Below, piece after piece: positions 2,189-56,417 of a stretch of 64,000 nt of DNA. Source of the stretch: Macrostomum lignano. Lineage: Eukaryota. The first letter of the stretch is position 1. Each line of letters opens with the position of its first letter. Below the pieces are notes generated by a model. The model ran no database searches, was not told the origin of the DNA, and saw only the letters and a program-made list of their open reading frames with translations. Location: contig NIVC01001710.1 in the NCBI GenBank assembly GCA_002269645.1, positions 1 to 64,000 on the forward strand. The letters are read 5' to 3'. A program made the position numbers and the translations under genes.

Positions 2189-2860
2189 ATGCAGAAACAA
2201 CAGGTGCAGTACGTGGTGACCAGCCAGCCGGAAGCGACTTTTGTGCAGACCGGGCAGCCCGTATCGATTGGTAAGTGATTTGAATTTAGTGCTATTACTG
2301 TTTCTTTATCTACACATTGCCACAGGCTGCAGTGACTTTTAAGGTGAATTCTGGAAAAAGGACAAGGACAAGGCTAAATACGAGTATTGAATGTCAACTC
2401 TTAATACGATAAATAAGGTTTAAATTATCTGAGGCTGGGCCTTGCCAGCCTTAATCCAGTTCTAGGGTCGGGGTCCCTAGTTTTGGTTACACACTCGTCA
2501 AAAGACATCATCACATGTAACAACCTGAACATCACTGCAGGAAAGCAGCAAGAGAGGGAATGGAGCACCGGCACCTGCGGCTGCTTCGAGGACTGCACCT
2601 CCTGCGTCTGCTCATTATTTTGCGGCTTCTGGTACCTAACCTGCAGCATCTCTAAACGAATGAACGAGCACTGCTGCACGCCGTTCTGCGTACCGGATAC
2701 TCTGATGATGTACCGACTGAAGCTGCGCACTCGGTACAACATCGAGGGCAGCGTTATTAAGGACTGCTGCTGCTCCTACTTTTGCGGCCCGTGCACCATG
2801 TGCCAGCTGGCTCGGGAGCTGAAACATATCGAGTCCCAGCTCAACGGTCCGGCCTTCTAA
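2189..2860 (+). CDS. PLAC8/cornifelin-family Cys-rich protein (2 coding exons)
   Basis: Exon 1 is 2189-2270 (MQKQQVQYVVTSQP...SIG, donor GTAAGT at 2271). Exon 2 is 2541-2860 (acceptor CTGCAG, phase 1 matches) and encodes EWSTGTCGCFEDC...LRTRYNIEGSVIKDCCCSYFCGPCTMCQLARELK, the PLAC8 signature. Confidence 0.9.
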
Positions 2861-3842: not shown

Positions 3843-15530
<11,688 letters not shown>

Positions 15531-25800: not shown

Positions 25801-25844
25801 AAGAGGGGAGAGAGTAGAGAGGAGAAGAGAGATGGGAGAGGAGA

Positions 25845-25932
<88 letters not shown>

Positions 25933-28379: not shown

Positions 28380-28454
<75 letters not shown>

Positions 28455-33579: not shown

Positions 33580-36500
33580 ATGAATATGTTCACTACAGGA
33601 ATAACTGATTTGCAAAGTAAGTTTTTTTAAATCAGGTTTCGCAATTTCTTTATGAAACCTTGATTAATTTGTCTTATGGTGTGTTTTGTATTGTAGACTT
33701 TATCATTTTAGTAAGCTTTGTGAAAGCAGATTTACTTTTGCGTGTTTATAGCCTATTACTATTCTTGCTGGTGTCATTTTTTTCTTTTATAGGCCTAGCA
33801 TTGAAATTTTTGGAGAACTTTTAAGGAGTTAGAGATATGGCACATAAATTGATAGTAGAGTTCTAGAGTTGTCTAGAGTTCTACACTTAAGCCATGGCAG
33901 CCATGGCTAAAATTCTATTGTATTTTAATATTCTCTTCTATGTTGGCAACAAATATCATCTATTAGGCCTCTTTAAAATCAACTTAAAGTATATATTTCT
34001 TTATCACTAAGTTAAGTATTGTCACTGGATAAAAAATGTGTTTTTAATCTAATTTAAGGCTTAGTTTAGATCTAGTTTAGTCTATTTTATTTTAATCTAA
34101 AAAATAAATAGCTTTCTCTATAATTAAAAACTTTTTTGCATTTAATACAGGTTATTGTCTTTTTTATAATATTATTTGATCTGTTTATAATATAAAACAA
34201 TTTTATCTGTCTTAATCTTAATGTTAGGCCTATCTGTTTATAATATTATCTAATAGATCTTGATCTATTCTTTTTGTACCAAGATAGAAAACTTCTATTA
34301 AAAAAGTATTATCTTGATATTGTAAGGTTCCCTTTTTGATTCAAAACCTTTTTAAAAATCTAATTGTAGCTTATATAGCAAATATTAGAAATATTTTATT
34401 TTTGATATATATAATATATGCATATATACACCTATATCTATTCAATCTAGTTATTAATTATTAATGTAATGATTAAGAATAATTTACTCCAAAAATATTA
34501 TAATATATTTAAGATAAGCCTTATTTAGCATCACTTGTTTTCTTAGAAAGTATTGTAATTAAAACTAGGCTATTTTTGTTTTAATGAGTATAATATCAAT
34601 AATATTGTAAATATTATAAATATTATGAAATTTTGTTTGTTTAAAACCAAACTGTGAAAGGGATATAAATACACAAGCAGAACCAGAAGGAAACCAACTT
34701 GTCTGCCGCTTGTTTCAAGCTTGAAATTGTTCTAGTATCTCGAAATTGAAGCCTTATTCAATACTTACTGATTTAGTTGTTTTGGTAGAAGCATTAAGAA
34801 GCCCCAAAATTGGGAGAGTTCAAACTGTTCTCAGAAGAATGAGAAATCCAGATATAGAATCTGAGAAATTGCCTTTAGAAGATAGGAATCCTACCACAGG
34901 GTAGAGAAGTCCAGACTCAGAGTCTGAGAAACCCACTTCAGGGCAGAATACCCAGTAAGTAAGCTGTGACCCTCTGATCCCAAGAATGCCCAGGACTGAG
35001 AAAATATCTTTAGAAGGGTATAGAAATAGGATAGACAGTGCCTAAAGACCCCTCAGGCTAGAAACTACAATAGAAGTACATATGCTACCAATGGAAGTAC
35101 ATGTGCTACCAGTAAAAAGGCAAGTAATAACTAGTAAGATCAGTAAGAAGAATTAACCCCTGTTACAACCTTGGTAACATGATATTCAATAATAGTAAAT
35201 AGAAGAGTATCCCTGTGACAACTTTGGTGGCATTGTGGAATTATTTATAAGGACAGAAGCAAGCCCTACATTATATTGTAGCAAATAGTCTCTTTGTACT
35301 AAATATATAAATTATAATTAATCTATGAAAACTATCAAATAGCTTTTTTCCTACTAAGCATTTAAAAGTAACAGTTTTCTAACTATTTATTTTTCTATTG
35401 TGCAAATGTTACTATAATATTTGCATTGGTATAGGCTACTTATCAAATTTATTTTTCTTACTAAAGGTTTTTATTAATGTATACATATGCTATTTTACTT
35501 TATCTCCCTAAATCTCTTTAGACGAATATTTTCATTTTATTTTTAGACTAATATATTGAATAGCTAATATCCTTTTTTGGCATCCTTAATTTAGACCTAA
35601 GGAAAGCAAGTAAACAAAAAATGTTTTATTATAAACAAATTAGATAGGTTCTGTCAAGATTTAGAGTCTAATATTATCTGATTAAAATTTTAATCCTAAT
35701 ATAAACTTTTATAGTACTATGTTAAAGTTGCGTGTCTGAGAAAAAGTAGAATTAAGAAGGTAAGCACTATCATTTTTTATGCGACATGTTTTGCCTCGCA
35801 TCAGGCATTGTCAGGCTATTAAAATTAGTAACGATTTATTTGTTCATTTATATTTAACAATTAAGACTAAAAATGGTTCGATAAATAGGCCAATTTATAT
35901 TTTTTATAATATTAATCCAAAAATATTTAATAGCCAGGGTCAATGTTATGCAACTTTTCTATGTATTAATAGAATATTCAAATCAATTAAGTATAAAATA
36001 TACATAAAAATATTAACAAATCACTTTGTTTAAACATTTTAGAGATTGGGATTGGCCTATCCGGCTTTGGATCAGTGTTTGTCTTCTTGGGCATACTGCT
36101 ATTTTTTGACCGTGGGCTGCTTGCAATAGGCAATGTGAGCAAGCTTAAGTGCTTTATGCTTGCTTGAATTATTTCTGTGTTTTGTTGATGTAAATTACTC
36201 TTTAAACCAAACTACATATTTCAGGTTCTGTTCCTCTCTGGCATTTGTTTTGTAATTGGTCTGGAGCGCACATTTCACTTCTTCTTTAAGCTAGAAAAGC
36301 TGAAAGGCACAGCCTTCTTTTTTGGCGGCATTCTAATTGTATTGTTTGTTTCACCTATACTGGGCATGCTGCTGGAGTTCTACGGCTTCTTCGTGCTCTT
36401 CAGGTATTCATTTCCGCTGCCATCTAACCAGGCTTGCTGCCATTTTAGTGTCCTGATGATTTTAGTAGTGTCCCTGCCTGAAGCCCAGTTTAGTGTCCTT

Positions 36501-37581
36501 GGCACCTAGTCCAGTGTCCCTGATGTCCAGTCCAGTGTCCCTGACGCCCAGTCCAGTGTCCCTGATGTCCAGTCCAGTGTCCCTGACGCCAGTTCAGTGT
36601 CCCTGACGCCAGTTCAGTGTCCCTGACGCCCAGTCCAGCGTCCCTGACGCCAGTTCAGTGTCCCTGACGCCCAGTCCAGTGTCCCTGACGCCAGTTTAGT
36701 GTCCCTGACGCCCAGTCCAGTGTCCCTGACGCCCAGTCCAGTGTCCCTGACGCCCAGTCCAGCGTCCCTGACGCCAGTTCAGTGTCCTTGACGCCCATTC
36801 CAGTGTCCCTGACGCCAGTTTAGTGTCCCTGACGCCCAGTCCAGTGTCCCTGACGCCCAGTCCAGTGTCCCTGACGCCCAGTCCAGCGTCCCTGACGCCA
36901 GTTCAGTGTCCCTGACGCCCAGTCCAGTGTCCCTGACGCCAGTTTAGTGTCCCTGACGCCAGTCCAGTGTCCTTGACGCCAGTCCAGTGTCCCTGACGCC
37001 AGTTCAGTGTCCCTGACGCCCAGTCCAGTGTCCCTGACGCCAGTTTAGTGTCCCTGACGCCCAGTCCAGTGTCCCTGACGCCCAGTCCAGTGTCCCTGAC
37101 GCCCAGTCCAGTGTCTCTGACGCCAGTTCAGTGTCCTTGACCCCCATTCCAGTGTCCCTGACGCCAGTTCAGTGTCCTTGACGCCCAGTCCAGTGTCCTT
37201 GACGCCAGTCCAGTGTCCTTGACGCCAGTCCAGTGTCCCTGACGCCAGTTTAGTGTCCTTGACGCCCTTTCCAGTGTCCATGACGCCAGTCCAGTGTCAG
37301 TGACGCAAGTACAGCTGGCAGTTTTTCTTTTTTTCAGCGGCTTCTTTCCTGTCGTTCTCAACTTTATGTCGCGGGTGCCAGTTATTGGTCCGGTGAGTAA
37401 TTGCTTTTTTATTTAACCAAAGAAGAGTAATATCTTTATTATGAGCTAGAGAGCATCCTATGAGTTATTCTTTGATTCATTTTGGCTTGTCAGAAAAAAT
37501 AACGAAACTGAATTACCGATTGAATTTCCAATCTTTTTCCAGATGCTGGACAAGTGGCGGACCGCAAGAAACCCAGTATGA
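33580..37581 (+). CDS. GOLT1: Vesicle transport protein GOT1 (GOLT1A/B-like), 5 exons
   Basis: Exons 33580-33616, 36043-36134, 36225-36403, 37338-37392 and 37543-37581 splice to [22 protein letters not shown]...[16 protein letters not shown]...[10 protein letters not shown]...[31 protein letters not shown]. This is a complete Got1/Sft2-family protein; the start could also be the ATG at 33586. Confidence 0.93.
34653..35240 (+). mobile_element. Possible decayed LTR plus PBS in GOT1 intron 1
   Basis: A GC-richer block in AT-rich DNA that starts TGTGA and ends TGTGACA, followed by ACTTTGGTGGCA. No partner LTR is seen. Confidence 0.3.
36500..37310. repeat. 19/20-bp minisatellite (CCAGTGTCCCTGACGCC[C]AGT)n in GOT1 intron 3
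   Basis: About 40 tandem units. Confidence 0.95.
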
Positions 37582-38959
37582 GCTGCTTGGCCTGTTGCTT
37601 CCGTGTTTTGTTGCTTTGCTTTTGCTAGTTTTCTTTTGGCTGACATTATTTCAAATCGTTGTCTTGATTTCAATTTCTTTCGTCTAATATAAAAATTTTG
37701 CGTTTTTGAGGGACGATGTCGCGATATTTATGGGCTAGTCTTCTACTGTCATATGAAGCAGTGATTCGGTGAAGACCTGCAGCAGGTGCGGGTGGACAAC
37801 ATTTCTCCACATATATTATTAATTGAAGACTTTATTAACTATTCGGGATTGACAAGCGCTAGGATAACTGATATATGGCCCCTACTACTCTTCAAAGTGG
37901 AGCACTGCTAACGGCATCTGGCCTAGTGAATTGTCATTGGTAGTCAAAATGTGCGAAAAAGTTGGCGTGCTTCCGATTTAGACATCCAGAAGTACCTTGG
38001 GCGATGGAGATTTTGTGCATTGTATAAAGTCGATGGGCTAGTATACAGTTGTAGAATTAACCAAAGTAAGCTCTGGTGCCAACATAAACATAATAATAAT
38101 ATACTATAATAACTGATTTCTCTGCTAGTCCTATTCTGTAGTCTGTAGCAGTGTCTCTGCTACGCCAGTTTTTACCTGATTAATTGACTCGTCAACTGAT
38201 ACGTATAAATTGATCATAGTGTACAACAATGCGCGTAAGAAGTTACCTGTTTTTTTAGCGTAAATTGCTTTGTAAATCATTTGTCTGCCTTCCCTACTTA
38301 CAGTGTTAATTCTAGACAGAATTTGAAAATTTTCAGTGCTCTGCTTATGATGAAAAATATAATGACAAAATCTATATGCTGGACCGAAGTTTAATTTAAG
38401 ATTAAATGTTCTCGTATCGAACACTGGTATCACCGATTTTCAACATCAATTAACGCCTGAGACCGTCTTGCAAGGATTTCTGCAATTGTGTTTGCCACCA
38501 ACTTCTAAATTGCAGGATCTCGAGAAAGGCAATTCCTGGTAGCTTCTAGCTTATACAGCTATAGTTATAATATTTAAAATGACGCTGTTTATTAAGGTAA
38601 GCTGAGCTGACGTGTTCTCTAATCATTGCCAGTCGTGCGATTTCGGTGTTGGGCTTTTCCGTTCCCCCAGCTGTTTAACCTTTTATAACAAACTGCTTTG
38701 ACTCGTGCGGTATGCAGAGATTTTTTAAGTCAGACTTAAATTTCAAGAAATACTACTTTAAATAGGAAAAATCGTAATGTTTTCGTTTTCTAAACGGATG
38801 TTTCAACTTTAGTAGAATGCTTTGCAACAAGGCGAGAGCCGGGTTATGTTCTTGACAGCTAGACAAAAATACATTGGACCGATAAGATTAGTTGCATTTT
38901 TTCTGCTGCATAAGCTCGAAAGCAAAAAGAAAAATAATGCATATGTAGTGAATTAATGG

Positions 38960-40914
38960 TAGATTAAGTCTATGGTTTCAGACTTGGATAATGATCACAG
39001 TCACGAGTGGCGAAGCCACGAGTGACTGCTGATCATTATTTAATTCTGAAACCATAGACATAATCGCATTATCATATAGACTAGCGTTTTCGGTTGATCA
39101 TTATGTAACGCCATTAAGCCACGCCATTAAGTAACGCTGCAGTGTCTTCGTGCCATAGATATTGGCTCGGCAGTGAGCAGGGACAAGGGAGCGCAGCTCC
39201 CTTGCGGGGGTGTGGGGGCAGAGCCCCCACTAATTGGACCATAGACAATTTTTTAGAATACAGTTCTCTAAAAGAAAAGCTCGACCATGAAGTCTGTTAG
39301 GAAGTTAAGAACTAGAAGCAAGAAGCGAGAGAAATCGAATTAAAAATGCCTCTTATCAACTGGAAAAACCTACCGGTCGACAGTTTAGATGGCGTCTCGT
39401 CTACTGAACTAGATTTTCTGAGTGAACTGAGCGCCGTGAACCACAGTTCCGATGAAATTCTTGGAGATTTTATCGACTACCTGACTAAAATCGAGACGGC
39501 TGATGAGGCCGCTGCGGTTTCTAGTGTCGAGCTTCCAGAACTATCTGATTTACCCAGTGCGATGGATGTTGCCGAACTGGAATCACTGCCGAGCACTACA
39601 CGAGAACACATGTTTCTGTATGGCAAAATGTTCGTGGAGTTTTTGAAGAAACATGGTGCTGTGGATGTAAGCGTGATCAGTGACAGTCGCTTGGCCGAAT
39701 TTTTAAGGTTCTTTTACTTCTGTCTAAAAAAATCTGACGGCAGTTGCTATTCGCCAGCTACGTTGGTCTGCATTCGTGCTGGAGTGCAGAGGTACTTGAC
39801 TCTCGTGCTGAAGCGTCGAACAAATATTATTTCCAGTGACGAGTTCGCCACTGCCAACCGGATGCTGCGAGTAAAGGTGCGGCATTTTCATGCTGATGGA
39901 GGCACTGTCAATCAGCACGAGCCAATAGAAGAAGGTGATTTACAGAAAATGCGTGCTTATTTTGACCGTTCTACAGCAGAACGGTTGCAAGATGAAGTAC
40001 TATTTACGCTGCTGTATGTCCTGGGCGAGAGAGGTCAAGAACACCTGTCAAGTCTAAAGCAAGTTGGCACGCTCCAAGAAGAAGTCGACGCTGATGGGAA
40101 TCCATATCTTGCGTTGCCGCCGTTAAAGACAAAAAACCAGACTAGCGATCCAACAAAATGCAAGGGAAATCAGCGCAAACAGAGTCGGATCTACGGCGCT
40201 CAGCGGGAGTTGATCCTGCATTATCAGAGTTTGTTACCGCAGAATTCGTCCTCGTTCTTTCCGCGCCCTCTGACTAACAATTCGGGAGGACAAATTCGAT
40301 TCTCTGCTACGCAAGTGCGCGGTGTCAATTGGTTGGCTGCATTCATGAAGCACGTTAGTAGTGTGTGCAACCTCTCCAAGCAGTACACGAATCACTGCAT
40401 ACGCGTCACGCGTATTGCGGATCTTTTCGACAAAGGAATGCCTATGGGGAGATAATGGCGGTAACGGGACAACGATCGGAGTCCACTGTTCGACGTTATC
40501 TCGCACGCAAGCGTGACAGAACCCTCAGGAAGGTTGCTACCGCTGTTAGTGACAATTTGGCCGCACCAACCGATGCGACTACGAGTGCAACCACTAGTGC
40601 AACAGTCATGCAGCAAGCTCAAGTTGACCTGCGAAGTGTGCAACAGCCGATGTTTGCCAACTGCCTCTTCGATGGGTGCACGTTCAAATTCTAACAAAGA
40701 ATATATAGCTCGTACTTATAAGTCTTAACTGTCGAAAATCAAATACTTTGGTATTCGTTTGCTTTGCTATATCCTCGATCTGTTTCCTGTTAAAGTTCTT
40801 GTTGCTTAAATTAATAAAAGCAGTGAATTTCTCGCTCATAATCTATGGCAATTTATCGTGACTTAACAGCTTCATTAAAAAATGCATTAAAAAACGATAG
40901 TCTATATGATAATG
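38960..40914 (+). mobile_element. Crypton-type tyrosine-recombinase DNA transposon
   Basis: The YR ORF lies between 24-bp inverted repeats (39067-39090 and 40891-40914, 1 mismatch) and inner 10-bp IRs (39151-39160 and 40841-40850). A 100-bp hairpin abuts the left IR. Exact termini are not determined. Confidence 0.8.
39346..40694 (+). CDS. Crypton/DUF3504-type tyrosine recombinase (one 1-nt frameshift at about 40447)
   Basis: Motifs YSPATLVCIRAGVQRYL, LGERG (Arg), KTKNQ (Lys) and YTNHCIRVT (HxxR). After adding one G to the G-run the frame continues GEIMAVTGQRSESTVRRY (Tyr) and ends FANCLFDGCTFKF. Confidence 0.85.
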
Positions 40915-41014
40915 AGTAGTAAAAATACCTTCAAACATTGTTGGGATTGACAGTTTTACTATGAATTTGATTTTTGAGCAATAGTGAACTGCTTTTAGAC
41001 CGCAGTTGCGTAGT

Positions 41015-41103
41015 CTATACTGAGCATGCTGCTGGAGTTCTATGGCTTTTTCGTGCTCTTCGGGTATTCATTTCCGCTGCCGTCTAACCAGGCTTGCTGC
41101 TTT
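41015..41103 (+). pseudogene. Duplicated GOT1 fragment (3' part of exon 3 and start of intron 3)
   Basis: Matches 36355-36443 with a few substitutions. The intron homology resumes after the satellite at 48572-48650. Confidence 0.9.
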
Positions 41104-44100
41104 TTTAGTGTCCTGATGATTCTAGTAGTGTCCCTGTCTGAAGCCCAGTTTAGTGTCCTGATGATTCTAGTAGTGTCCCTGTCTGAAGCCCAGTTTAGTG
41201 TCCTGATGATTCTAGTAGTGTCCCTGTCTAAAGCCCAGTTTAGTGTCCTGATGATTCTAGTAGTGTCCCTGTCTGAAGCCCAGTTTAGTGTCCTGATGAT
41301 TTTAGTAGTGTCCCTGTCTGAAGCCCAGTTTAGTGTCCTGATGATTCTAGTAGTGTCCCTGTCTGAAGCCCAGCTTAGTGTCCTGATGATTCTAGTAGTG
41401 TCCCTGTCTGAAGCCCAGCTTAGTGTCCTGAGGATTCTAGTAGTGTCCCTGTCTGAAGCCCAGTTTAGTGTCCTGATGATTCTAGTAGTGTCCCTGTCTG
41501 AAGCTCAGTTTAGTGTCCTGATGATTCTAGTAGTGTCCCTGTCTGAAGCCCAGTTTAGTGTCCTGATGATTTTAGTAGTGTCCCTGTCTGAAGCCCAGTT
41601 TAGTGTCCTGATGATTCTAGTAGTGTCCCTGTCTGAAGCCCAGCTTAGTGTCCTGATGATTCTAGTAGTGTCCCTGTCTGAAGCCCAGTTTAGTGTCCTG
41701 ATGATTTTAGTAGTGTCCCTGTCTGAAGCCCAGTTTAGTGTCCTGATGATTCTAGTAGTGTCCCTGTCTGAAGCCCAGTTTAGTGTCCTGATGATTTTAG
41801 TAGTGTCCCTGTCTGAAGCCCAGTTTAGTGTCCTGATGATTCTAGTAGTGTCCCTGTCTGAAGCCCAGTTTAGTGTCCTGATGATTCTAGTAGTGTCCCT
41901 GTCTGAAGCCCAGCTTAGTGTCCTGATGATTCTAGTAGTGTCCCTGTCTGAAGCCCAGCTTAGTGTCCTGAGATTCTAGTAGTGTCCCTGTCTGAAGCCC
42001 AGTTTAGTGTCCTGATGATTCTAGTAGTGTCCCTGTCTGAAGCTCAGTTTAGTGTCCTGATGATTCTAGTAGTGTCCCTGTCTGAAGCCCAGTTTAGTGT
42101 CCTGATGATTTTAGTAGTGTCCCTGTCTGAAGCCCAGTTTAGTGTCCTGATGATTCTAGTAGTGTCCCTGTCTGAAGCCCAGCTTAGTGTCCTGATGATT
42201 CTAGTAGTGTCCCTGTCTGAAGCCCAGTTTAGTGTCCTGATGATTTTAGTAGTGTCCCTGTCTGAAGCCCAGTTTAGTGTCCTGATGATTCTAGTAGTGT
42301 CCCTGTCTGAAGCCCAGTTTAGTGTCCTGATGATTTTAGTAGTGTCCCTGTCTGAAGCCCAGTTTAGTGTCCTGATGATTTTAGTAGTGTCCCTGTCTGA
42401 AGCCCAGTTTAGTGTCCTGATGATTCTAGTAGTGTCCCTGTCTGAAGCTCAGTTTAGTGTCCTGATGATTCTAGTAGTGTCCCTGTCTGAAGCTCAGTTT
42501 AGTGTCCTGATGATTCTAGTAGTGTCCCTGTCTGAAGCCCAGTTTAGTGTCCTGATGATTTAGTAGTGTCCCTGTCTGAAGCCCAGTTTAGTGTCCTGAT
42601 GATTCTAGTAGTGTCCCTGTCTGAAGCCCAGTTAGTGTCCTGATGATTCTAGTAGTGTCCCTGTCTGAAGCCCAGTTTAGTGTCCTGATGATTTAGTAGT
42701 GTCCCTGTCTGAAGCCCAGTTTAGTGTCCTGATGATTCTAGTAGTGTCCCTGTCTGAAGCCCAGTTTAGTGTCCTGATGATTCTAGTAGTGTCCCTGTCT
42801 GAAGCTCAGTTTAGTGTCCTGATGATTCTAGTAGTGTCCCTGTCTGAAGCTCAGTTTAGTGTCCTGATGATTCTAGTAGTGTCCCTGTCTGAAGCTCAGT
42901 TTAGTGTCCTGATGATTCTAGTAGTGTCCCTGTCTGAAGCCCAGTTTAGTGTCCTGATGATTCTAGTAGTGTCCCTGTCTGAAGCCCAGTTTAGTGTCCT
43001 GATGATTCTAGTAGTGTCCCTGTCTGAAGCCCAGTTTAGTGTCCTGATGATTCTAGTAGTGTCCCTGCTGAAGCCCAGTTTAGTGTCCTGATGATTCTAG
43101 TAGTGTCCCTGCTGAAGCCCAGTTTAGTGTCCTGATGATTCTAGTAGTGTCCCTGTCTGAAGCTCAGTTTAGTGTCCTGATGATTCTAGTAGTGTCCCTG
43201 TCTGAAGCTCAGTTTAGTGTCCTGATGATTCTAGTAGTGTCCCTGTCTGAAGCCCAGTTTAGTGTCCTGATGATTCTAGTAGTGTCCCTGTCTGAAGCCC
43301 AGCTTAGTGTCCTGATGATTCTAGTAGTGTCCCTGTCTGAAGCCCAGCTTAGTGTCCTGATGATTTTAGTAGTGTCCCTGTCTGAAGCCCAGTTTAGTGT
43401 CCTGATGATTCTAGTAGTGTCCCTGTCTGAAGCCCAGTTTAGTGTCCTGATGATTCTAGTAGTGTCCCTGTCTGAAGCCCAGTTTAGTGTCCTGATGATT
43501 CTAGTAGTGTCCCTGTCTGAAGCCCAGTTTAGTGTCCTGATGATTCTAGTAGTGTCCCTGTCTGAAGCCAGTTTAGTGTCCTGATGATTCTAGTAGTGTC
43601 CCTGTCTGAAGCCCAGTTTAGTGTCCTGATGATTCTAGTAGTGTCCCTGTCTGAAGCCAGTTTAGTGTCCTGATGATTCTAGTAGTGTCCCTGTCTGAAG
43701 CCCAGTTTAGTGTCCTGATGATTCTAGTAGTGTCCCTGTCTGAAGCCCAGTTTAGTGTCCTGATGATTCTAGTAGTGTCCCTGTCTGAAGCCCAGTTTAG
43801 TGTCCTGATGATTCTAGTAGTGTCCCTGTCTGAAGCCCAGTTTAGTGTCCTGATGATTCTAGTAGTGTCCCTGTCTGAAGCCCAGTTTAGTGTCCTGATG
43901 ATTCTAGTAGTGTCCCTGTCTGAAGCCCAGTTTAGTGTCCTGATGATTCTAGTAGTGTCCCTGTCTGAAGCCCAGTTTAGTGTCCTGATGATTCTAGTAG
44001 TGTCCCTGTCTGAAGCCCAGTTTAGTGTCCTGATGATTCTAGTAGTGTCCCTGTCTGAAGCCAGTTTAGTGTCCTGATGATTCTAGTAGTGTCCCTGTCT

Positions 44101-47100
44101 GAAGCCCAGTTTAGTGTCCTGATGATTCTAGTAGTGTCCCTGTCTGAAGCCCAGTTTAGTGTCCTGATGATTCTAGTAGTGTCCCTGTCTGAAGCCCAGT
44201 TTAGTGTCCTGATGATTCTAGTAGTGTCCCTGTCTGAAGCCCAGTTTAGTGTCCTGATGATTCTAGTAGTGTCCCTGTCTGAAGCCCAGTTTAGTGTCCT
44301 GATGATTCTAGTAGTGTCCCTGTCTGAAGCCCAGTTTAGTGTCCTGATGATTCTAGTAGTGTCCCTGTCTGAAGCCCAGTTTAGTGTCCTGATGATTCTA
44401 GTAGTGTCCCTGTCTGAAGCCCAGTTTAGTGTCCTGATGATTCTAGTAGTGTCCCTGTCTGAAGCCCAGTTTAGTGTCCTGATGATTCTAGTAGTGTCCC
44501 TGTCTGAAGCCCAGTTTAGTGTCCTGATGATTCTAGTAGTGTCCCTGTCTGAAGCCCAGTTTAGTGTCCTGATGATTCTAGTAGTGTCCCTGTCTGAAGC
44601 CCAGTTTAGTGTCCTGATGATTCTAGTAGTGTCCCTGTCTGAAGCCCAGTTTAGTGTCCTGATGATTCTAGTAGTGTCCCTGTCTGAAGCCCAGTTTAGT
44701 GTCCTGATGATTCTAGTAGTGTCCCTGTCTGAAGCCCAGTTTAGTGTCCTGATGATTCTAGTAGTGTCCCTGTCTGAAGCCCAGTTTAGTGTCCTGATGA
44801 TTCTAGTAGTGTCCCTGTCTGAAGCCCAGTTTAGTGTCCTGATGATTCTAGTAGTGTCCCTGTCTGAAGCCCAGTTTAGTGTCCTGATGATTCTAGTAGT
44901 GTCCCTGTCTGAAGCCCAGTTTAGTGTCCTGATGATTCTAGTAGTGTCCCTGTCTGAAGCCCAGTTTAGTGTCCTGATGATTCTAGTAGTGTCCCTGTCT
45001 GAAGCCCAGTTTAGTGTCCTGATGATTCTAGTAGTGTCCCTGTCTGAAGCCCAGTTTAGTGTCCTGATGATTCTAGTAGTGTCCCTGTCTGAAGCCCAGT
45101 TAGTGTCCTGATGATTCTAGTAGTGTCCCTGTCTGAAGCCCAGTTTAGTGTCCTGATGATTCTAGTAGTGTCCCTGTCTGAAGCCCAGTTTAGTGTCCTG
45201 ATGATTCTAGTAGTGTCCCTGTCTGAAGCCCAGTTTAGTGTCCTGATGATTCTAGTAGTGTCCCTGTCTGAAGCCCAGTTTAGTGTCCTGATGATTCTAG
45301 TAGTGTCCCTGTCTGAAGCCCAGTTTAGTGTCCTGATGATTCTAGTAGTGTCCCTGTCTGAAGCCCAGTTTAGTGTCCTGATGATTCTAGTAGTGTCCCT
45401 GTCTGAAGCCCAGTTTAGTGTCCTGATGATTCTAGTAGTGTCCCTGTCTGAAGCCCAGTTTAGTGTCCTGATGATTCTAGTAGTGTCCCTGTCTGAAGCC
45501 CAGTTTAGTGTCCTGATGATTCTAGTAGTGTCCCTGTCTGAAGCCCAGTTTAGTGTCCTGATGATTCTAGTAGTGTCCCTGTCTGAAGCCCAGTTTAGTG
45601 TCCTGATGATTCTAGTAGTGTCCCTGTCTGAAGCCCAGTTTAGTGTCCTGATGATTCTAGTAGTGTCCCTGTCTGAAGCCCAGTTTAGTGTCCTGATGAT
45701 TCTAGTAGTGTCCCTGTCTGAAGCCCAGTTTAGTGTCCTGATGATTCTAGTAGTGTCCCTGTCTGAAGCCCAGTTTAGTGTCCTGATGATTCTAGTAGTG
45801 TCCCTGTCTGAAGCCCAGTTTAGTGTCCTGATGATTCTAGTAGTGTCCCTGTCTGAAGCCCAGTTTAGTGTCCTGATGATTCTAGTAGTGTCCCTGTCTG
45901 AAGCCCAGTTTAGTGTCCTGATGATTCTAGTAGTGTCCCTGTCTGAAGCCCAGTTTAGTGTCCTGATGATTCTAGTAGTGTCCCTGTCTGAAGCCCAGTT
46001 TAGTGTCCTGATGATTCTAGTAGTGTCCCTGTCTGAAGCCCAGTTTAGTGTCCTGATGATTCTAGTAGTGTCCCTGTCTGAAGCCAGTTTAGTGTCCTGA
46101 TGATTCTAGTAGTGTCCCTGTCTGAAGCCCAGTTTAGTGTCCTGATGATTCTAGTAGTGTCCCTGTCTGAAGCCCAGTTTAGTGTCCTGATGATTCTAGT
46201 AGTGTCCCTGTCTGAAGCCCAGTTTAGTGTCCTGATGATTCTAGTAGTGTCCCTGTCTGAAGCCCAGTTTAGTGTCCTGATGATTCTAGTAGTGTCCCTG
46301 TCTGAAGCCCAGTTTAGTGTCCTGATGATTCTAGTAGTGTCCCTGTCTGAAGCCCAGTTTAGTGTCCTGATGATTCTAGTAGTGTCCCTGTCTGAAGCCC
46401 AGTTTAGTGTCCTGATGATTCTAGTAGTGTCCCTGTCTGAAGCCCAGTTTAGTGTCCTGATGATTCTAGTAGTGTCCCTGTCTGAAGCCCAGTTTAGTGT
46501 CCTGATGATTCTAGTAGTGTCCCTGTCTGAAGCCCAGTTTAGTGTCCTGATGATTCTAGTAGTGTCCCTGTCTGAAGCCCAGTTTAGTGTCCTGATGATT
46601 CTAGTAGTGTCCCTGTCTGAAGCCCAGTTTAGTGTCCTGATGATTCTAGTAGTGTCCCTGTCTGAAGCCCAGTTTAGTGTCCTGATGATTCTAGTAGTGT
46701 CCCTGTCTGAAGCCCAGTTTAGTGTCCTGATGATTCTAGTAGTGTCCCTGTCTGAAGCCCAGTTTAGTGTCCTGATGATTCTAGTAGTGTCCCTGTCTGA
46801 AGCCCAGTTTAGTGTCCTGATGATTCTAGTAGTGTCCCTGTCTGAAGCCCAGTTTAGTGTCCTGATGATTCTAGTAGTGTCCCTGTCTGAAGCCCAGTTT
46901 AGTGTCCTGATGATTCTAGTAGTGTCCCTGTCTGAAGCCCAGTTTAGTGTCCTGATGATTCTAGTAGTGTCCCTGTCTGAAGCCCAGTTTAGTGTCCTGA
47001 TGATTCTAGTAGTGTCCCTGTCTGAAGCCCAGTTTAGTGTCCTGATGATTCTAGTAGTGTCCCTGTCTGAAGCCCAGTTTAGTGTCCTGATGATTCTAGT

Positions 47101-48571
47101 AGTGTCCCTGTCTGAAGCCCAGTTTAGTGTCCTGATGATTCTAGTAGTGTCCCTGTCTGAAGCCCAGTTTAGTGTCCTGATGATTCTAGTAGTGTCCCTG
47201 TCTGAAGCCCAGTTTAGTGTCCTGATGATTCTAGTAGTGTCCCTGTCTGAAGCCCAGTTTAGTGTCCTGATGATTCTAGTAGTGTCCCTGTCTGAAGCCC
47301 AGTTTAGTGTCCTGATGATTCTAGTAGTGTCCCTGTCTGAAGCCCAGTTTAGTGTCCTGATGATTCTAGTAGTGTCCCTGTCTGAAGCCCAGTTTAGTGT
47401 CCTGATGATTCTAGTAGTGTCCCTGTCTGAAGCCCAGTTTAGTGTCCTGATGATTCTAGTAGTGTCCCTGTCTGAAGCCCAGTTTAGTGTCCTGATGATT
47501 CTAGTAGTGTCCCTGTCTGAAGCCCAGTTTAGTGTCCTGATGATTCTAGTAGTGTCCCTGTCTGAAGCCCAGTTTAGTGTCCTGATGATTCTAGTAGTGT
47601 CCCTGTCTGAAGCCCAGTTTAGTGTCCTGATGATTCTAGTAGTGTCCCTGTCTGAAGCTCAGTTTAGTGTCCTGATGATTCTAGTAGTGTCCCTGTCTGA
47701 AGCCCAGTTTAGTGTCCTGATGATTCTAGTAGTGTCCCTGTCTGAAGCCCAGTTTAGTGTCCTGATGATTCTAGTAGTGTCCCTGTCTGAAGCCCAGTTT
47801 AGTGTCCTGATGATTCTAGTAGTGTCCCTGTCTGAAGCCCAGTTTAGTGTCCTGATGATTCTAGTAGTGTCCCTGTCTGAAGCCCAGTTTAGTGTCCTGA
47901 TGATTCTAGTAGTGTCCCTGTCTGAAGCCAGTTTAGTGTCCTGATGATTCTAGTAGTGTCCCTGTCTGAAGCCCAGTTTAGTGTCCTGATGATTCTAGTA
48001 GTGTCCCTGTCTGAAGCCCAGTTTAGTGTCCTGATGATTCTAGTAGTGTCCCTGTCTGAAGCCCAGTTTAGTGTCCTGATGATTCTAGTAGTGTCCCTGT
48101 CTGAAGCCCAGTTTAGTGTCCTGATGATTCTAGTAGTGTCCCTGTCTGAAGCCCAGTTTAGTGTCCTGATGATTCTAGTAGTGTCCCTGTCTGAAGCCCA
48201 GTTTAGTGTCCTGATGATTCTAGTAGTGTCCCTGTCTGAAGCCCAGTTTAGTGTCCTGATGATTCTAGTAGTGTCCCTGTCTGAAGCCCAGTTTAGTGTC
48301 CTGATGATTCTAGTAGTGTCCCTGTCTGAAGCCCAGTTTAGTGTCCTGATGATTCTAGTAGTGTCCCTGTCTGAAGCCCAGTTTAGTGTCCTGATGATTC
48401 TAGTAGTGTCCCTGTCTGAAGCCCAGTTTAGTGTCCTGATGATTCTAGTAGTGTCCCTGTCTGAAGCCCAGTTTAGTGTCCTGATGATTCTAGTAGTGTC
48501 CCTGTCTGAAGCTCAGTTTAGTGTCCTGATGATTCTAGTAGTGTCCCTGCCTGAAGCCCAGTTTAGTGTCC
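41104..48571. repeat. 45-bp satellite array, about 165 copies (TTTAGTGTCCTGATGATTCTAGTAGTGTCCCTGTCTGAAGCCCAG)n
   Basis: A highly homogeneous array about 7.46 kb long; the unit is present once at 36444-36488. Confidence 0.98.
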
Positions 48572-49558
48572 TTGGCGCCTAGTCCAGTGTCCCTGATGTC
48601 CAGTCAAGTGTCCCTGACCCCAGTCCAGTGTCCCTGACGCCCAGTCCAGCGTTTTATTGGTAAATTTTATTGGTACGCTGCCTGGGGTTTCATGATCTCT
48701 CTATAACCCTCTCCCCTTGGCTACGCTACTAGTGAAAAGACGGCCTTCCTATTTTTAAAAAAAATTAAAATCTGATTTTTCCAAATTCGCCGAAATAAAA
48801 AGTTTCAATTTGAATTCATCTGTTAGTAGTAACACATGTAAATGTAGTAGTTTTGGAATTTATTAAATATATTAATTAAATCCGCAATATACTTCAGTTT
48901 CTCTGTCAATTGCTGGCGTGGGAATCTGCGTAGCTGGCAACGCAAGAAGACTCTTGGATTTACGAGTTACGAGCTATATGTGTTAATCAGGGCTAATGGC
49001 TAGCCTTTAGAGATAGGATCGAGCGCGGACTTTTGAATTTCACGGTGAAGGCAGTGTTTATTTTATAGATCGTTCTTTGGATACAAAAATGGACGCTCTA
49101 TTTTAACTCGGTTTGTCTTGTTAATTGCAGCTTTTGTTGATTGGTTTGTGTTCAGTCTAGCTAACAAGTTACAGTTTTTTTGCGGCGCTTTCAGCTGTAA
49201 TCTCTATAATTATAGTTGTCATAAAAAATTGAAGACATGCAGTTTCAGTAGAGAAAACGTTTAAAGTGCTTCGCGCTTCACGTTGGCGTTGTTTGCAAAA
49301 TACAATTGTAAAATTAACGCTATTGCGATAGATTGCACCACTGAGGAATAATTATAATTGACACGAAACGCGTTTAAAATTGAATTATAGGGCTTTTTAC
49401 ACCGCCATTAAATTGGACCAATTTTTACATACTTCGATCGTGCATCCGATACGTGATATTTGATGGTTTTAATGGTGATTTGAGCGAGTCTACGGGCATA
49501 TCGCTATACCCGGAAACAAATTAAAATGTAGCTATCATCCAAATGTTATCAATGTTTA

Positions 49559-50630
49559 TTGTACCATGACCTTTGTGCACACTGGGCACTTATTCTTGCC
49601 TTTGAATGCCATATAGACTACATTTAAGCCCGCTTGCAGGAAAGAAATATCGAACAAATTGTCTATGTCAAAATTACTTTAATGCAAATTAGCGGGCAGT
49701 TAATGACATTTAACGCCCGGTTGTCTATGTCAAAATTACTTTAATGCAAATTAGCGGGCAGTTAATGACATTTAACACCCGATTGTCTATGTCAAACTTA
49801 CTTTAATGCAAATTAGCGGGCAGTTAATGACATTTAACGCCCGATTGTCTATGTCAAACTTACTTTAATGCAAATTAGCGGGCAGTTAAGTATCAGATTA
49901 AACATACCTTTTGATGGAGTTATTTGTATAAATCACGAGGGCCTGAGGCCCGAGGGATTTATGAAAATAACTCCCGAAAAAGGCATGTGTAATCTCGTAT
50001 AAACCATAGACATAAAGACTTTACGGGATATTATTGAATATTACCAAATAAAATTGCGTCCAAGAACGCAAATATTGTCACGGAAAGTCTTTATTTCTAT
50101 GGATTATTGACATTTAACGCCCGGTTGTCTATGTCAAACTTACTTTAATGCAAATTAGCGGGTAGTTAATATCATTAACTTCCCGCTAATTTTGTCCCAC
50201 TTTTTCAAGGACACAAATGTCTATGGCACAATGATAGGCGCCGTAGGCGCCCTCTGATTTCTCATTAACGCCCTTAAAGCATGGGTATTAATTTACTATT
50301 AATTTAATAGGTATGTACTATATGTACTATTAATTAATAATAATTAATTAATTAATTAATTATTTACTAAATTAATTAATATTAAATTTATTAATAAATT
50401 AATAAATAATTAATTAATTAAATAATAATATACTAATAATTGTTAATGATATTAACTGCCCGCTAATTTGCATTAGAGTAAGTTTGAAATAGACAATCGG
50501 GCGTTAAATGTCATTAACTGCCCGCTAATTTGCATTAAAGTAGGTGTGACTACTGCAAGCGGGCTTAAATGTAGTTTATGGCATTAAAAGGCAAGAATAA
50601 GTGCCCCGCGGGCACAAAGGTCATGGTACA
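49559..50630. mobile_element. Foldback element with about 80-bp TIRs and 62-bp subterminal tandem repeats
   Basis: TGTACCATGACCTTTGTGC...GCCCGCTTGCAG (49559-49639) is inverted at about 50551-50630. 62-bp units start at 49659, 49721, 49783 and 49845, with inverted copies at about 50455-50535 and an AT-only centre. Confidence 0.75.
49896..50102. mobile_element. Non-autonomous Crypton-like double-hairpin element
   Basis: An imperfect palindrome at 49896-49993 is centred on CGAG-GGCC-TGA-GGCC-CGAG, followed by a second IR at 50004-50022/50084-50102. It shares AAACCATAGACATAA with the Crypton hairpin at about 39049. Confidence 0.55.
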
Positions 50631-52599
50631 ATGACATTTAACGCCCGATTGTCTATGTCAAACTTACTTTAATGCAAATTAGCGGGCAGTTAATGACATT
50701 TAAACCACTTTAAAGCTCACTTTCAGGGAGGTTATTGACATAGATTTTATTTTGCGGGATTTAATCGATCACTTTCCCGGACATATTGCAAGGATTATTG
50801 TATGTATCTAAATAAGCGAGCTTCTCTCTTCTCATCCTTCGTGACTCGAGAAATTTCTTAATGAAATTTCGTCTCTGGTAAGAAAAGGTATGTCCTTCGG
50901 CTCTCGGGATTTAATCACATACCAACATCAAACCCATAGAATCTTATACTTAACGCCCGATTATTCTGTCCCACTTTTTCAAGGACACAAATGTCTATGG
51001 CACAATAATAGTAATACCTATGCTTTAATTAATTAAGGGCGTTAATGGGAAAAAGTGTTGTCATTATATTCGTGCTGGCTTTGTACTGAATCAAATCACC
51101 TTTTGGCCATAAAAACCCTCAACCGGGACCTCTCGTTTCCGCGCCCCTATGTTTTCGTAAAGTTTTTCACATTCAATTCTGTGTGAAATCTTGTGCGTTT
51201 TCAATGTGCGGGCCTACATTATTAATCTAAAGCTTAAGTTCAACCTTTTTTGTATATATTGGTGCTGCATACATTTTATGTAACTATGGCACTCGCTCTT
51301 CTATCTTGTATTTGTCTACTCTGGCTTCAAACCATGTCAGTGCATACCTCACATATGTACATGTACGATGTTATAGGGTTAGTTTACTCTCAATTAAGAG
51401 AGGGAGTAGAGAGAGAGAAAACGTAAAAGAACTCAGCATCATTATTTGCATGCTCTGCACTCAAGGCAGAGAGCCATACGGGTGGAGACGCGTAGCTGTC
51501 TCGCGTTTAAAAAAAGCGCATTAATTTCTAGTGAAAGACGCGGCCGCTGGCGGTGTGCCGCTAGCTACATGTACATTGGTTACTTACTTCACTAATCCAG
51601 AACAAAAATGGAAACAGCTACGTCCAGACCACCTTTGATGTCACTTTAAAGCAGCAAATGTCTTCTTTCGAATAAATCCAATTCTAATCTCGTACACGTT
51701 TGGTCATTTCATTCAAAATTTATGCTTGAATTAACCTCTAGGCATCCAAGCTTGGTTCTGTAAGATCGCTTCAAAGCCAAGGCCATAGACAAATTTGTCT
51801 TTCTTACTGAATCAGGTGCACCCCTAAAAGCCCAGAATTAAGTATAGAGCTTTTCTGCTAGTTCCTGTTTAAACCCTCCTTACCCACAAATGGATTCTAC
51901 GCACCCGAAAGAGACAGCAAACATTTGAGTCAAAACATAATGAAAATACTTGATGGACTTCTTTAAACCATGTCTATGTGCCGGCCATAGTCGGCACTTG
52001 CTTTAGTGATGCGGGACATGGTTTTTGATGCCATGGACATTTTTGAAGCTCTGAGCTTTTAGGCTGTTTCGGTATGGCCTGCAGCGGTGCAGGCCTCTGG
52101 CTTTCAAATGGTTAAAGCAAGGAGTTCTATACTTAGCAATCTTGTCTTGCTAATTAAAGAACTCCTTGGTTAAAGCATCGTAAAGCCAGACAGTGTTACA
52201 GCTTAAAAATGACACCAGAGGTATGCAGCTGCTTCCATTTCTGCTCCCGCGGGATTAAAAGTGTCAGAACTTGCCGGATACATCTTGTCGGTGTTCAACT
52301 AACCAAAATGTACATTGTGGCGGCCCAATCAGCACGCAGCCAGCGATTGCGAGTACATCTGCACTGAAACCCCCTGCCCGCCAGGCTGGGGGGTGGGTGT
52401 ACTCGGGCAGACAGTCAGTATGCTAAGTCGGGGGGGTTGGCCTTCAATCGTGCCACCTTTTTGGCGCACCTCCCCATGTGATCGCGTGCTTATTTATACT
52501 TACCGCGTAAAGCAAATAAACTTTCACGTTTCTCGCTTGCAACTTACTTCGTTTTCGCAAGCCGCTAAATTGGTGAGCCCGACATAGCTATTTCGTACA

Positions 52600-53320
52600 A
52601 TGGCTTCCAACACAGAGGCAGCTGTCTCTCAAACTGCCCACGTTTTGGGCAGCTCAACCCCGCGCATGGTTCATTCAAGCCGAAGCCCAGTTTTCTCTGC
52701 GCGGAATCACTCAAGATGCGACCAAGTACAACTACTTGGTGGCAGCGCTCGACCAGCAAACGGCTGAACGCCTCCTCGACATTTTAGAGGCTCCCCCAGC
52801 AGAGGGCAAGTACGAGACGCTGAAGCAACGTCTCAAAGGCACCTTCGACTTGACGAGGCAGCAGAGGGCCAGTCGCCTGCTCAACATGACCGGCCTCGGT
52901 GATCGGCGGCCCTCAGAACTCATGGATGAGATGCTCGCCCTGCTGGGAGACCACCCACCGTGCCTACTCTTCGAAGAGTTGTTCCGCCAGCAGCTGCCGC
53001 CGGACGTGCGCATGGCCATGGCAACCGCCGACTTCGCGGAGCCTCGGCAAGCAGCGCGGCTCGCCGACAGGCTGTGGGCCAGCAGGCCGCAGTTCACCGC
53101 TGCCTCCGTCCAGCAGCCAGCGGTGGCGACCTCCCCACCGCCTGACCAGCCGGCGGTGGCTTCGGCCAGCAGGAGCAGCTGCCCGGCCCGGCAGCATCGG
53201 CCCCCACAGCGCGGTCAGGACAGCGGGCTGTGCTTTTATCATCGCCGGTTCGGCGCGAAGGCCCATCGCTGCGAGGCACCCTGCAGCTTCCAGGGAAACG
53301 GGCAGGCCGGCCGTCAGTGA
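52600..53320 (+). CDS. gag: Gypsy Gag (2-nt deletion near 52627)
   Basis: ATG at 52600. [19 protein letters not shown] lies in the frame of ORF 52736-53320, and the C-terminus carries a [16 protein letters not shown] zinc-knuckle-like motif. Confidence 0.9.
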
Positions 53321-56300: not shown

Positions 56301-56417
56301 CCGCCTAAGCGGCCTGTACCACCCTCGGCCGCCGCCGACAGCCAGCAACCCCAGGCCGCCCTCCCCAGCCGCCGGCAGCCGCCACGCCGGTGCCGCCGAA
56401 CGGTTTTCGACACATAG
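53293..56417 (+). CDS. pol: Gypsy Pol (protease, RT, RNase H, integrase); -1 frame relative to gag; 1-nt frameshift at about 54086
   Basis: FLVDTGA (PR), YIDD (RT), TVDASD and DHKPL (RH), HPSV...CVAC (IN zinc finger), HVDLVGP and ANGLVERFH (IN), GPFKV. Confidence 0.95.

What the first reader, a model, noticed from the sequence alone, without database searches (positions are those of the whole stretch)
41015..48650. Birth of a satellite: single-copy GOT1 intron 45-mer amplified about 165-fold in a duplicated fragment
41015-41103 copies GOT1 exon3/intron3 (36355-36443). The next 45 bp occur once in the gene (36444-36488), bounded by a 10-bp direct repeat TTTAGTGTCC, but are tandemly repeated for 7.46 kb here before intron homology resumes (48572-48650). 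The final unit keeps the ancestral CTGCCTG and some early units keep the ancestral GATTTTAG, while the centre is homogenised. Conversely, the neighbouring 19/20-mer is expanded in the gene (about 40 copies) but not in the duplicate. Ancestor, seed microhomology and product are all visible in one window.
Basis: seen in the sequence. Interest (0 to 1): 0.75.

Follow-up and report, generated by a model that had tools for sequence, protein, structure and literature searches.

The report
Hypervariable 45-bp minisatellite beside flatworm Got1
A 7.5-kb run of 166 copies of a 45-bp unit sits in an old 225-bp copy of a Got1 gene fragment in the flatworm Macrostomum lignano. The same array has only 8 and 16 copies at the two sister loci, so this is a recent local expansion of an existing variable minisatellite, not the birth of a satellite from single-copy DNA.

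Summary
Positions 41104-48572 are 166 head-to-tail 45-bp units (99% matches). They lie inside a copy of the exon 3/intron 3 junction of the Got1 gene, which sits 4.66 kb upstream.

The window is Macrostomum lignano contig NIVC01001710.1 (Mlig_3_7). Tandem and simple repeats make up about 15% of that genome.

Two other Got1 loci in the same assembly change the interpretation:
- **The duplication is old.** Both loci carry the same fragment, with identical junctions and the same seven derived flank substitutions.
- **The array already existed.** It has 8 and 16 units at those loci, so array formation predates the split of the three copies. Only the growth to 166 units is specific to this window.
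- **The 45-mer is not a unique seed.** It is a diverged dimer of the intron's own 20/21-bp minisatellite unit. The bounding TTTAGTGTCC is that unit's core. One paralogue's intron holds 3.8 tandem copies of the 45-mer.
- **The GATTTTAG units are probably derived, not ancestral.**

Inside the array, old variant units sit at the edges, there is a 12-unit block duplication, and a 4.8-kb interior is almost pure.

Verdict: an ordinary but well-documented VNTR-type expansion. Array length and genome-wide distribution could not be checked.

The parts
33580..37581 (+). Got1 (vesicle transport protein GOT1B) gene, five coding exons. This is the source of the duplicated fragment.
   Evidence: Pfam PF04178; 133-aa product P0128 = BOX15_Mlig002190g1/g3; exon mapping by tblastn and translation.
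36355..36443 (+). Source segment: the last 49 bp of exon 3 (ends at 36403) plus the first 40 bp of intron 3.
   Evidence: Gap-free alignment to 41015-41103, 82 of 89 identical.
36444..36488 (+). The single 45-bp unit in intron 3. It forms the diverged 5' edge (two subunits of 22 and 23 bp) of the intron minisatellite.
   Evidence: Only gene-side copy in this window. Each half matches the 20/21-mer at 17 positions, and 0-1 of 2000 shuffles score as well. The L002 paralogue has 3.8 copies here.
36477..37314 (+). Intron 3 minisatellite of 20/21-bp units, 40.4 copies. The sister loci have 14.1 and 8.8 copies.
   Evidence: TRF.
38934..40926 (+). Window-specific insertion of a Crypton-like (tyrosine-recombinase) element between the gene and the duplicate. 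Its reading frame is interrupted after 369 aa.
   Evidence: 99.4% identical over 1968 bp to a copy on NIVC01002014.1. The protein is 100% identical to a M. lignano 'Tyr recombinase domain-containing protein'. L002 and L004 show the uninterrupted site.
41015..41103 (+). Left part of the duplicated Got1 fragment (exon 3 end and intron 3 start), carrying 7 derived substitutions.
   Evidence: Identical in the three loci.
41104..43660 (+). Units 1-57 of the 45-bp array: the older, heterogeneous part. It includes a 12-unit block duplication (units 7-16 at 41374-41823 repeat as units 19-28 at 41914-42362).
   Evidence: Variant maps. Unit 3 shares 37G>A with L004 unit 5.
43661..48471 (+). Units 58-164: a nearly pure block with 1 substitution and 4 one-base deletions in 4.8 kb. 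This is the recent expansion.
48472..48561 (+). Units 165-166. The last unit keeps CTGCCTG (34C), as does the last unit of the L004 array.
48562..48651 (+). Right part of the duplicated fragment: about 4.8 diverged 20/21-bp units, ending at the junction CCAGCG|TTTTATTGG.
   Evidence: The junction is the same in L002 and L004.

Best explanation
Intron 3 of M. lignano Got1 holds a compound minisatellite. Its core is 20/21-bp units, and its 5' edge is a diverged two-subunit (45-bp) higher-order unit.

Before the three Got1 loci of this assembly diverged, a fragment of about 225 bp or more was copied once to a site about 1.4 kb downstream of the Got1 stop codon. The fragment covered the exon 3 end, the intron 3 start and the first repeats. 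The copying mechanism is inferred, not shown: templated 'filler' synthesis during break repair, or replication template switching.

In that copy the 45-bp unit became a copy-number-variable array. It now has 8, 16 and 166 units at the three loci.

The array grows and shrinks by out-of-register recombination or replication slippage between units, including multi-unit blocks. This homogenises the interior and leaves old variant units at the edges. The window's haplotype underwent a recent burst that produced about 107 near-identical units.

Nothing indicates a function. It is a neutral, locally amplified VNTR, at most the 'short array to local amplification' step of satellite DNA evolution.
For: Shown:
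- The array and its flanks.
- The organism and contig.
- Sister loci L002 and L004 have identical junctions, and their 89-bp left flank is identical to the window's. All three duplicates share 7 substitutions that are absent from all three gene copies.
- Copy numbers are 8.2, 16.2 and 166.2 for the 45-mer array. The intron 20/21-mer has 8.8, 14.1 and 40.4. The intron 45-mer has 3.8, 1 and 1.
- The 45-mer halves are related to the 20/21-mer.
- Shared edge variants: 37G>A in window unit 3 and L004 unit 5; 7G>A in L002 unit 3 and L004 unit 5; a terminal 34C unit in the window and in L004.
- The unit pattern 'cja.b.cb.b' is repeated 12 units later, and identical variants sit next to each other as runs (aa, aaa, hh).
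- Units 58-164 are almost invariant.
- Gene versus duplicate flank divergence is 7/89. Divergence between the loci is 0.5-9%.

Background: simple and tandem repeats are 15% of this genome, and the assembly holds 180 Mb of redundant blocks at 95% identity or more (PMC5730564).

Inferred: the way the fragment was copied, and slippage or unequal exchange as the growth mechanism.
Against: - Array length rests on a single PacBio CLR/Canu contig, and no reads could be inspected.
- The 12 one-base deletions are all in or next to short homopolymers. They may be uncorrected consensus errors.
- I cannot exclude that the common ancestor had a long array that shrank twice, although the pure interior argues for recent growth here.
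- Genome-wide absence of the 45-mer was tested on only about 130 kb of M. lignano DNA.
- No outgroup species was available to date the duplication.
- The three loci do not give one consistent tree. The window is closest to L004 in the gene, but L002 and L004 share a MITE-like insertion that the window lacks. Recombination among the copies therefore blurs the order of events.
Confidence: 0.8

Rival explanations
1. In this lineage a unique 45-bp intron segment, bounded by a chance 10-bp direct repeat, was duplicated through that microhomology. It was then amplified about 165-fold, so ancestor, seed and product are all present in this window.
For: In the window and in L004 the gene has exactly one 45-mer, flanked by TTTAGTGTCC on both sides. 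The last array unit carries the gene's CTGCCTG.
Against: Arrays of 8 and 16 units with the same junctions exist at the sister loci. The 'microhomology' is the periodic core of the minisatellite. The L002 intron has 3.8 copies, all with GATTCT, so 19T is probably derived.
Confidence: 0.08
2. The array exists, but its length of 166 units is an assembly artefact. Either the assembler over-extended a tandem repeat, or it merged reads from the three similar loci.
For: The assembly comes from noisy PacBio CLR reads (Canu 1.4, Pilon polishing) of a highly repetitive, partly redundant genome (PMC5730564). Twelve one-base deletions occur in or next to short homopolymers.
Against: Both flanks are collinear with two independently assembled contigs. 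The array has an ordered internal structure: a variant gradient, a block duplication, and edge units shared with the sister loci. A spuriously extended consensus would not be expected to show this. Assemblers more often collapse tandem repeats than expand them (general knowledge).
Confidence: 0.12
3. The 45-mer belongs to a dispersed satellite or to a transposon-borne tandem repeat, and the Got1-adjacent arrays are only three of many.
For: M. lignano is very rich in tandem repeats and transposons. Three different mobile elements have inserted within 2 kb of the array's left edge in one locus or another.
Against: No terminal inverted or direct repeats flank the fragment plus array. The 45-mer is absent from the other roughly 100 kb of M. 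lignano DNA examined. There is no translated match in the 5.8-billion-protein collection and no match in JGI metagenome contigs. The array is contiguous with Got1 exon sequence, which fixes the origin of the fragment.
Confidence: 0.05
4. The pure 4.8-kb interior arose in one step: rolling-circle replication of an excised circle of 45-mers, followed by reintegration into the array. It did not arise by many slippage or unequal-exchange events.
For: 107 consecutive units carry one substitution. Rolling-circle amplification is a proposed route for satellite DNA growth (PMC4935994).
Against: No direct evidence. The block duplication in units 7-28 shows that ordinary multi-unit misalignment operates here. 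The same purity can come from a few successive doublings.
Confidence: 0.1
5. The array is coding. One frame is open through every 45-bp unit ([15 protein letters not shown]) and is in frame with the Got1 exon fragment's ATG at 41026, giving a repetitive hydrophobic protein.
For: ORFs of up to 614 aa, interrupted only by one-base deletions. The stop codon lies just after the array, at 48582.
Against: About half of all frames of a random 15-codon unit lack a stop ((61/64)^15, roughly 0.49). No homologue exists in the protein collection. No gene is called there in the GenBank annotation of the locus. Only about 3 of 13 unit variant types are synonymous in this frame (derived), as expected without constraint.
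Confidence: 0.03

Closest known systems
Hypervariable minisatellites / VNTRs (for example the human loci studied by Jeffreys; cited from general knowledge)
   Same: Tandem units of tens of bp. Very different copy numbers between homologous copies (8, 16, 166). Variant repeats are interspersed with a polarity along the array. The flanks are stable, and growth occurs by out-of-register exchange or slippage.
   Different: The copies compared here are paralogous or redundant contigs of one assembly, not demonstrated alleles. No germline mutation data exist. At 7.5 kb the array is at the long end for a minisatellite.
Model of satellite DNA birth: de novo duplication, then a short array, then local amplification (Ruiz-Ruano et al. 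2016, PMC4935994)
   Same: A short array at one locus (8-16 units, under 1.5 kb) and a locally amplified version of the same array (7.5 kb) are both seen.
   Different: No dissemination to other loci is shown. There is no heterochromatic cluster. The 'de novo' step is not captured, because the unit was already part of a tandem repeat.
Higher-order repeat formation in tandem arrays (as in alpha satellite; general knowledge)
   Same: The amplified unit is a dimer of two diverged subunits. The whole 45-bp units are 99% alike, whereas the two halves share only 15 aligned identities.
   Different: Much smaller scale, with subunits of 22-23 bp. Not centromeric.
Templated 'filler' insertions, or short dispersed duplications made during double-strand-break repair or replication template switching (general knowledge)
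   Same: A piece of about 225 bp was copied from about 2.6 kb away on the same strand and in the same orientation. It has no transposon termini or poly(A) tail.
   Different: No diagnostic junction microhomology was found. The mechanism is inferred only.

Membership tests
Minisatellite / VNTR | Head-to-tail array of units of about 10-100 bp | tested here: met
   Period 45, 166.2 copies, 99% matches.
Minisatellite / VNTR | Copy number varies between homologous copies of the locus | tested here: met
   8.2, 16.2 and 166.2 units at three loci with identical junctions. Whether these loci are alleles or homeologues is not resolved.
Minisatellite / VNTR | Locus-specific, not dispersed through the genome | tested here: inconclusive
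   Found only at Got1 loci in about 130 kb of M. lignano DNA. The whole genome could not be searched with these tools.
Minisatellite / VNTR | Interspersed variant repeats, with polarity along the array | tested here: met
   35 of the 42 variant units lie in units 1-57; units 58-164 are nearly pure.
Classical satellite DNA | Long arrays (tens of kb to Mb), usually heterochromatic and cytologically clustered | tested here: not met
   The array is 7.5 kb and lies between a Got1 gene and other genes and transposons.
Classical satellite DNA | High genomic abundance, or presence at many loci | not testable with these tools
   No M. lignano whole-genome or read collection is searchable here. The metagenome scan was empty.
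Higher-order repeat | The unit is composed of two or more diverged subunits, and whole units are more alike than the subunits are to each other | tested here: met
   Each half matches the 20/21-mer at 17 positions, with 0-1 of 2000 shuffles scoring as well. The two halves share 15 aligned identities. Whole units are 99% alike.
Transposon-borne tandem repeat (MITE, Helitron or foldback internal arrays) | Array enclosed by transposon termini (TIRs, TSD or hairpin ends) | tested here: not met
   Only chance 12-15-mers are shared between the 3.5 kb to the left and the 4.1 kb to the right. The nearby Crypton-like and MITE-like insertions are locus-specific and lie outside the fragment.

The most novel reading that the evidence does not exclude
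The three Got1 loci form a natural time series of a tandem array on its way to becoming a satellite. A dimeric higher-order unit forms at the decayed edge of an intronic minisatellite. It escapes the gene on a 225-bp templated copy, persists as a short array (8-16 units), and then bursts to 166 units on one haplotype, possibly through a one-step rolling-circle event or at an unusually high ongoing mutation rate. If the 45-mer also proves to be spreading to other loci or circles, or to be length-polymorphic between DV1 and NL10 worms, this would be a tractable model for satellite emergence in a transgenesis-capable animal.
Probability: 0.12. Interest if true: 0.55.

Novelty: new member of a known kind. 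Interest (0 to 1): 0.3.

Why it matters
The direct importance is modest. The locus is a clear, internally dated example of how a tandem array grows: stable old edges, block duplications and a young pure core. Three homologous copies serve as snapshots, and the lab organism's genome is 15% tandem repeats.

It also shows that a single window can mislead. The apparent 'single-copy ancestor plus seed microhomology' dissolves once paralogous loci are compared.

In practice, the locus could serve as a hypervariable marker to tell M. lignano haplotypes, homeologues or lines apart. It is also a place where the assembly's repeat lengths should be checked.

Tried and rejected
- **Protein search with the array ORF (41026-41976).** No homologue, not even the sequence itself, so it gave no route to other arrays.
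- **Exact 31-mer scan of JGI metagenome contigs.** Nothing found, as expected for a flatworm sequence.
- **DNA folding of three units on both strands.** No structure beyond shuffled controls (z = +0.6 and +1.25). Hairpin-driven slippage is not supported.
- **Rfam and tRNA scans of the region.** Nothing found, so there is no SINE or tRNA-derived explanation for the flanks.
- **Search for terminal repeats around the fragment plus array.** Only chance matches, so transposon capture is rejected.
- **Search for further gene/duplicate homology (a decayed tandem gene copy).** None beyond the 225-bp fragment.
- **Coding reading of the open frame.** Rejected on lack of constraint and lack of annotation.
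- **Junction microhomology.** At most 1 bp, which is uninformative.
- **Literature search for a described Macrostomum satellite matching this unit.** None found in the abstracts and titles returned.
Full report
**1. What is in the sequence**

Tandem Repeats Finder reports an array at 41104-48572 with period 45, 166.2 copies, 99% matches and score 14637. I segmented it into 166 units. Of these, 124 equal the consensus TTTAGTGTCCTGATGATTCTAGTAGTGTCCCTGTCTGAAGCCCAG.

Immediately to the left, 41015-41103 aligns without gaps to 36355-36443, with 82 of 89 positions identical. To the right, 48528-48652 aligns to 36455-36581 with one gap. A sensitive comparison of the gene region with everything around the array found no other homology.

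The upstream sequence is a Got1 (GOLT1B-like) gene:
- The joined exons hit Pfam PF04178 at E=2.6e-14.
- They reproduce a 133-aa M. lignano protein.
- Exon 3 ends at 36403, so the copied piece is the last 49 bp of exon 3, 40 bp of intron 3, and the start of the intron's repeats.

These are a single 45-mer in the gene here, CTGCCTG in the last unit, some early GATTTTAG units, and about 40 versus 4.8 copies of the 20/21-mer.

**2. Where the window comes from**

The ORF at 39346-40452 is 100% identical to BOX15_Mlig009749g2 of Macrostomum lignano. Fetching the contigs that encode the Got1 protein returned a locus identical to window 23580-47581 with the same record coordinates. The window is therefore NIVC01001710.1:1-64000 of assembly Mlig_3_7, GCA_002269645.1.

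That assembly was built from PacBio CLR reads with Canu and polished with Pilon. Simple and tandem repeats make up 15% of the genome. The assembly contains 180 Mb of redundant blocks at 95% identity or more, because the sequenced DV1 line carries extra large chromosomes (PMC5730564).

**3. The decisive comparison**

The same assembly holds two more Got1 loci, L002 (NIVC01002080.1) and L004 (NIVC01000452.1).

Both carry the same Got1 fragment downstream of the gene:
- The left junction (GCGTAGT|CTATACTGAGC) and right junction (CCAGCG|TTTTATTGG) are identical.
- The 89-bp left flank is identical in all three duplicates. It differs from all three gene copies by the same seven substitutions.

So there was one duplication, and it is older than the split of the three loci. 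Those loci differ from each other by 0.5-9% in unique sequence.

Both sister duplicates already contain a 45-mer array. Copy numbers by TRF:

| Locus | 45-mer in intron 3 | 20/21-mer in intron 3 | 45-mer in duplicate | 20/21-mer in duplicate |
|---|---|---|---|---|
| Window | 1 | 40.4 | 166.2 | 4.8 |
| L004 | 1 | 14.1 | 16.2 | 4.2 |
| L002 | 3.8 | 8.8 | 8.2 | 4.7 |

Edge units are shared between loci:
- 37G>A occurs in window unit 3 and L004 unit 5.
- 7G>A occurs in L002 unit 3 and L004 unit 5.
- The terminal unit has 34C in both the window and L004.

The array therefore existed, with several units, in the common ancestor. Only the growth to 166 units is specific to the window's haplotype.

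**4. The 45-mer is not a unique seed**

- Each half of the unit aligns to the neighbouring 20/21-bp unit at 17 positions. Only 0-1 of 2000 shuffles reach that score.
- The unit is thus a diverged dimer from the 5' edge of the intron minisatellite.
- The 'bounding 10-bp direct repeat' TTTAGTGTCC is the conserved core of that repeat, not a chance microhomology.
- In L002 the Got1 intron itself has 3.8 tandem 45-mers. All have GATTCT, with both CTGCCTG and CTGTCTG present.
- By parsimony 19C is ancestral. The 19T (GATTTTAG) state is derived in the window and L004 gene copies.
- The ten 19T units in the window's array are then either new mutations spread by block duplication, or conversions from the gene 4.6 kb away. 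They are not retained ancestral units.

**5. How the array grew**

The variant map shows three things:
- 35 of the 42 variant units lie in units 1-57.
- The ten-unit pattern of units 7-16 recurs exactly at units 19-28. The one difference is a one-base deletion in an otherwise unique GAGGATT unit. This is a 12-unit (540-bp) block duplication.
- Units 58-164 (43661-48471) carry one substitution and four one-base deletions in 4.8 kb.

Identical variants often sit side by side. Together these are the expected marks of out-of-register recombination or replication slippage, with homogenisation of the interior and conservation of the edges.

The near-zero diversity of the interior, against 1-3% divergence between loci, makes the burst much younger than the locus split (inference).

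Single-strand folding gave no structure beyond shuffled controls. I have no evidence for a structure-driven mechanism.

The way the 225-bp fragment was first copied is not shown. There are no transposon termini or target duplications around it and no useful junction microhomology. Templated repair synthesis or template switching from about 2.6 kb upstream is the most economical inference.

**6. Surroundings**

Two locus-specific insertions lie between the gene and the duplicate:
- The window has a 1993-bp Crypton-like (tyrosine recombinase) element at 38934-40926. It is absent from L002 and L004, and 99.4% identical to a copy on another contig.
- L002 and L004 have a MITE-like element of about 335 bp with long terminal inverted repeats and the duplicated target GCTTTTAGAC. 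It lies 14 bp left of the fragment, where the window shows the empty site. L004 carries a further 2.5-kb nested insertion.

These presence/absence patterns do not fit one tree together with the sequence identities. This suggests exchange among the copies.

No Rfam family or tRNA lies in 30-52 kb.

**7. What could not be tested**

- No reads were available, so the 7.5-kb length rests on one contig. The twelve one-base deletions, all in or beside short homopolymers, may be consensus errors.
- The whole M. lignano genome could not be searched. The 45-mer is absent from the other DNA I could fetch, from JGI metagenome contigs and, as a translated ORF, from the protein collection. This does not exclude other arrays.

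**8. Comparison with known kinds, and verdict**

The locus meets the tested defining features of a hypervariable minisatellite/VNTR and of a small higher-order repeat. It fails the size and context criterion of classical satellite DNA, and it is not enclosed by transposon ends.

It matches the 'short array, then local amplification' stage of the satellite-birth model of Ruiz-Ruano et al. (PMC4935994). It does not show the de novo step, and it shows no dissemination.

In a genome that is 15% tandem repeats this is an ordinary kind of event, though unusually well documented by three homologous copies.

Scores: interest 0.3; novelty, new member of a known kind.

Noticed in passing
window 38934-40926 (+); L001 9602-11569: A Crypton-like tyrosine-recombinase element, 99.4% identical between two contigs, so probably recently mobile. 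The window copy's ORF stops after 369 aa, against 449 aa in the other copy. It has no Pfam hit at E<=0.01, and its relatives in M. lignano are only 34-54% identical.
   Followed up: partly
L002 14118-14452; L004 ~14897-17682; empty site at window 40990-41000: A MITE-like element of about 335 bp with 95-120-bp terminal inverted repeats and a GCTTTTAGAC target duplication. It is present at two of the three loci, and L004 has a 2.5-kb nested insertion. The presence/absence pattern conflicts with the sequence-identity tree, which hints at recombination among the Got1 loci.
   Followed up: partly
window 36477-37314 versus L004 12900-13203 and L002 12189-12369: The intronic 20/21-bp minisatellite of Got1 is itself copy-number variable (40, 14 and 9 units). 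The haplotype with the largest 45-mer array also has the largest 21-mer array.
   Followed up: yes
window 52736-56417 (+): A GC-rich LTR-retrotransposon pol ORF of 1172 aa (RT, RNase H, integrase zinc-binding and integrase core domains). It appears intact.
   Followed up: partly
window 57341-60051 (+): Very long in-frame coding-looking tandem repeats: a 33-bp unit x58.5 giving ([11 protein letters not shown])n and a 30-bp unit x17 giving (PTGPxSTGPQ)n, followed by a Cys-rich EGF-like tail. This is probably a mucin-like or adhesive secreted protein gene.
   Followed up: no
window 49558-50700: A foldback-like structure: 3.7 copies of a 62-bp unit at 49658-49889 and inverted copies at 50451-50572, around an AT-rich (ATTA)n centre.
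   Followed up: partly
window 22059-23377, 25149-26562, 28188-29557: Three blocks of GA-rich low-complexity sequence, each about 1.3 kb and spaced about 3 kb apart, within a segment that is itself triplicated (73-89% identity between copies in the BLAST comparison).
   Followed up: no
window 13745-14405; 5134-5889; 30954-31562; 60759-61228: Further sizeable tandem arrays in the same 64 kb: (CTAT)165, a 14-mer x54, a 24-mer x23 with 112-bp higher-order structure, and a 34-mer x14. This fits the reported 15% tandem-repeat content of the genome.
   Followed up: no
window 3843-10471 (-); 2483-2860 (+): A RasGEF-domain gene on the minus strand, and a PLAC8-family ORF.
   Followed up: no
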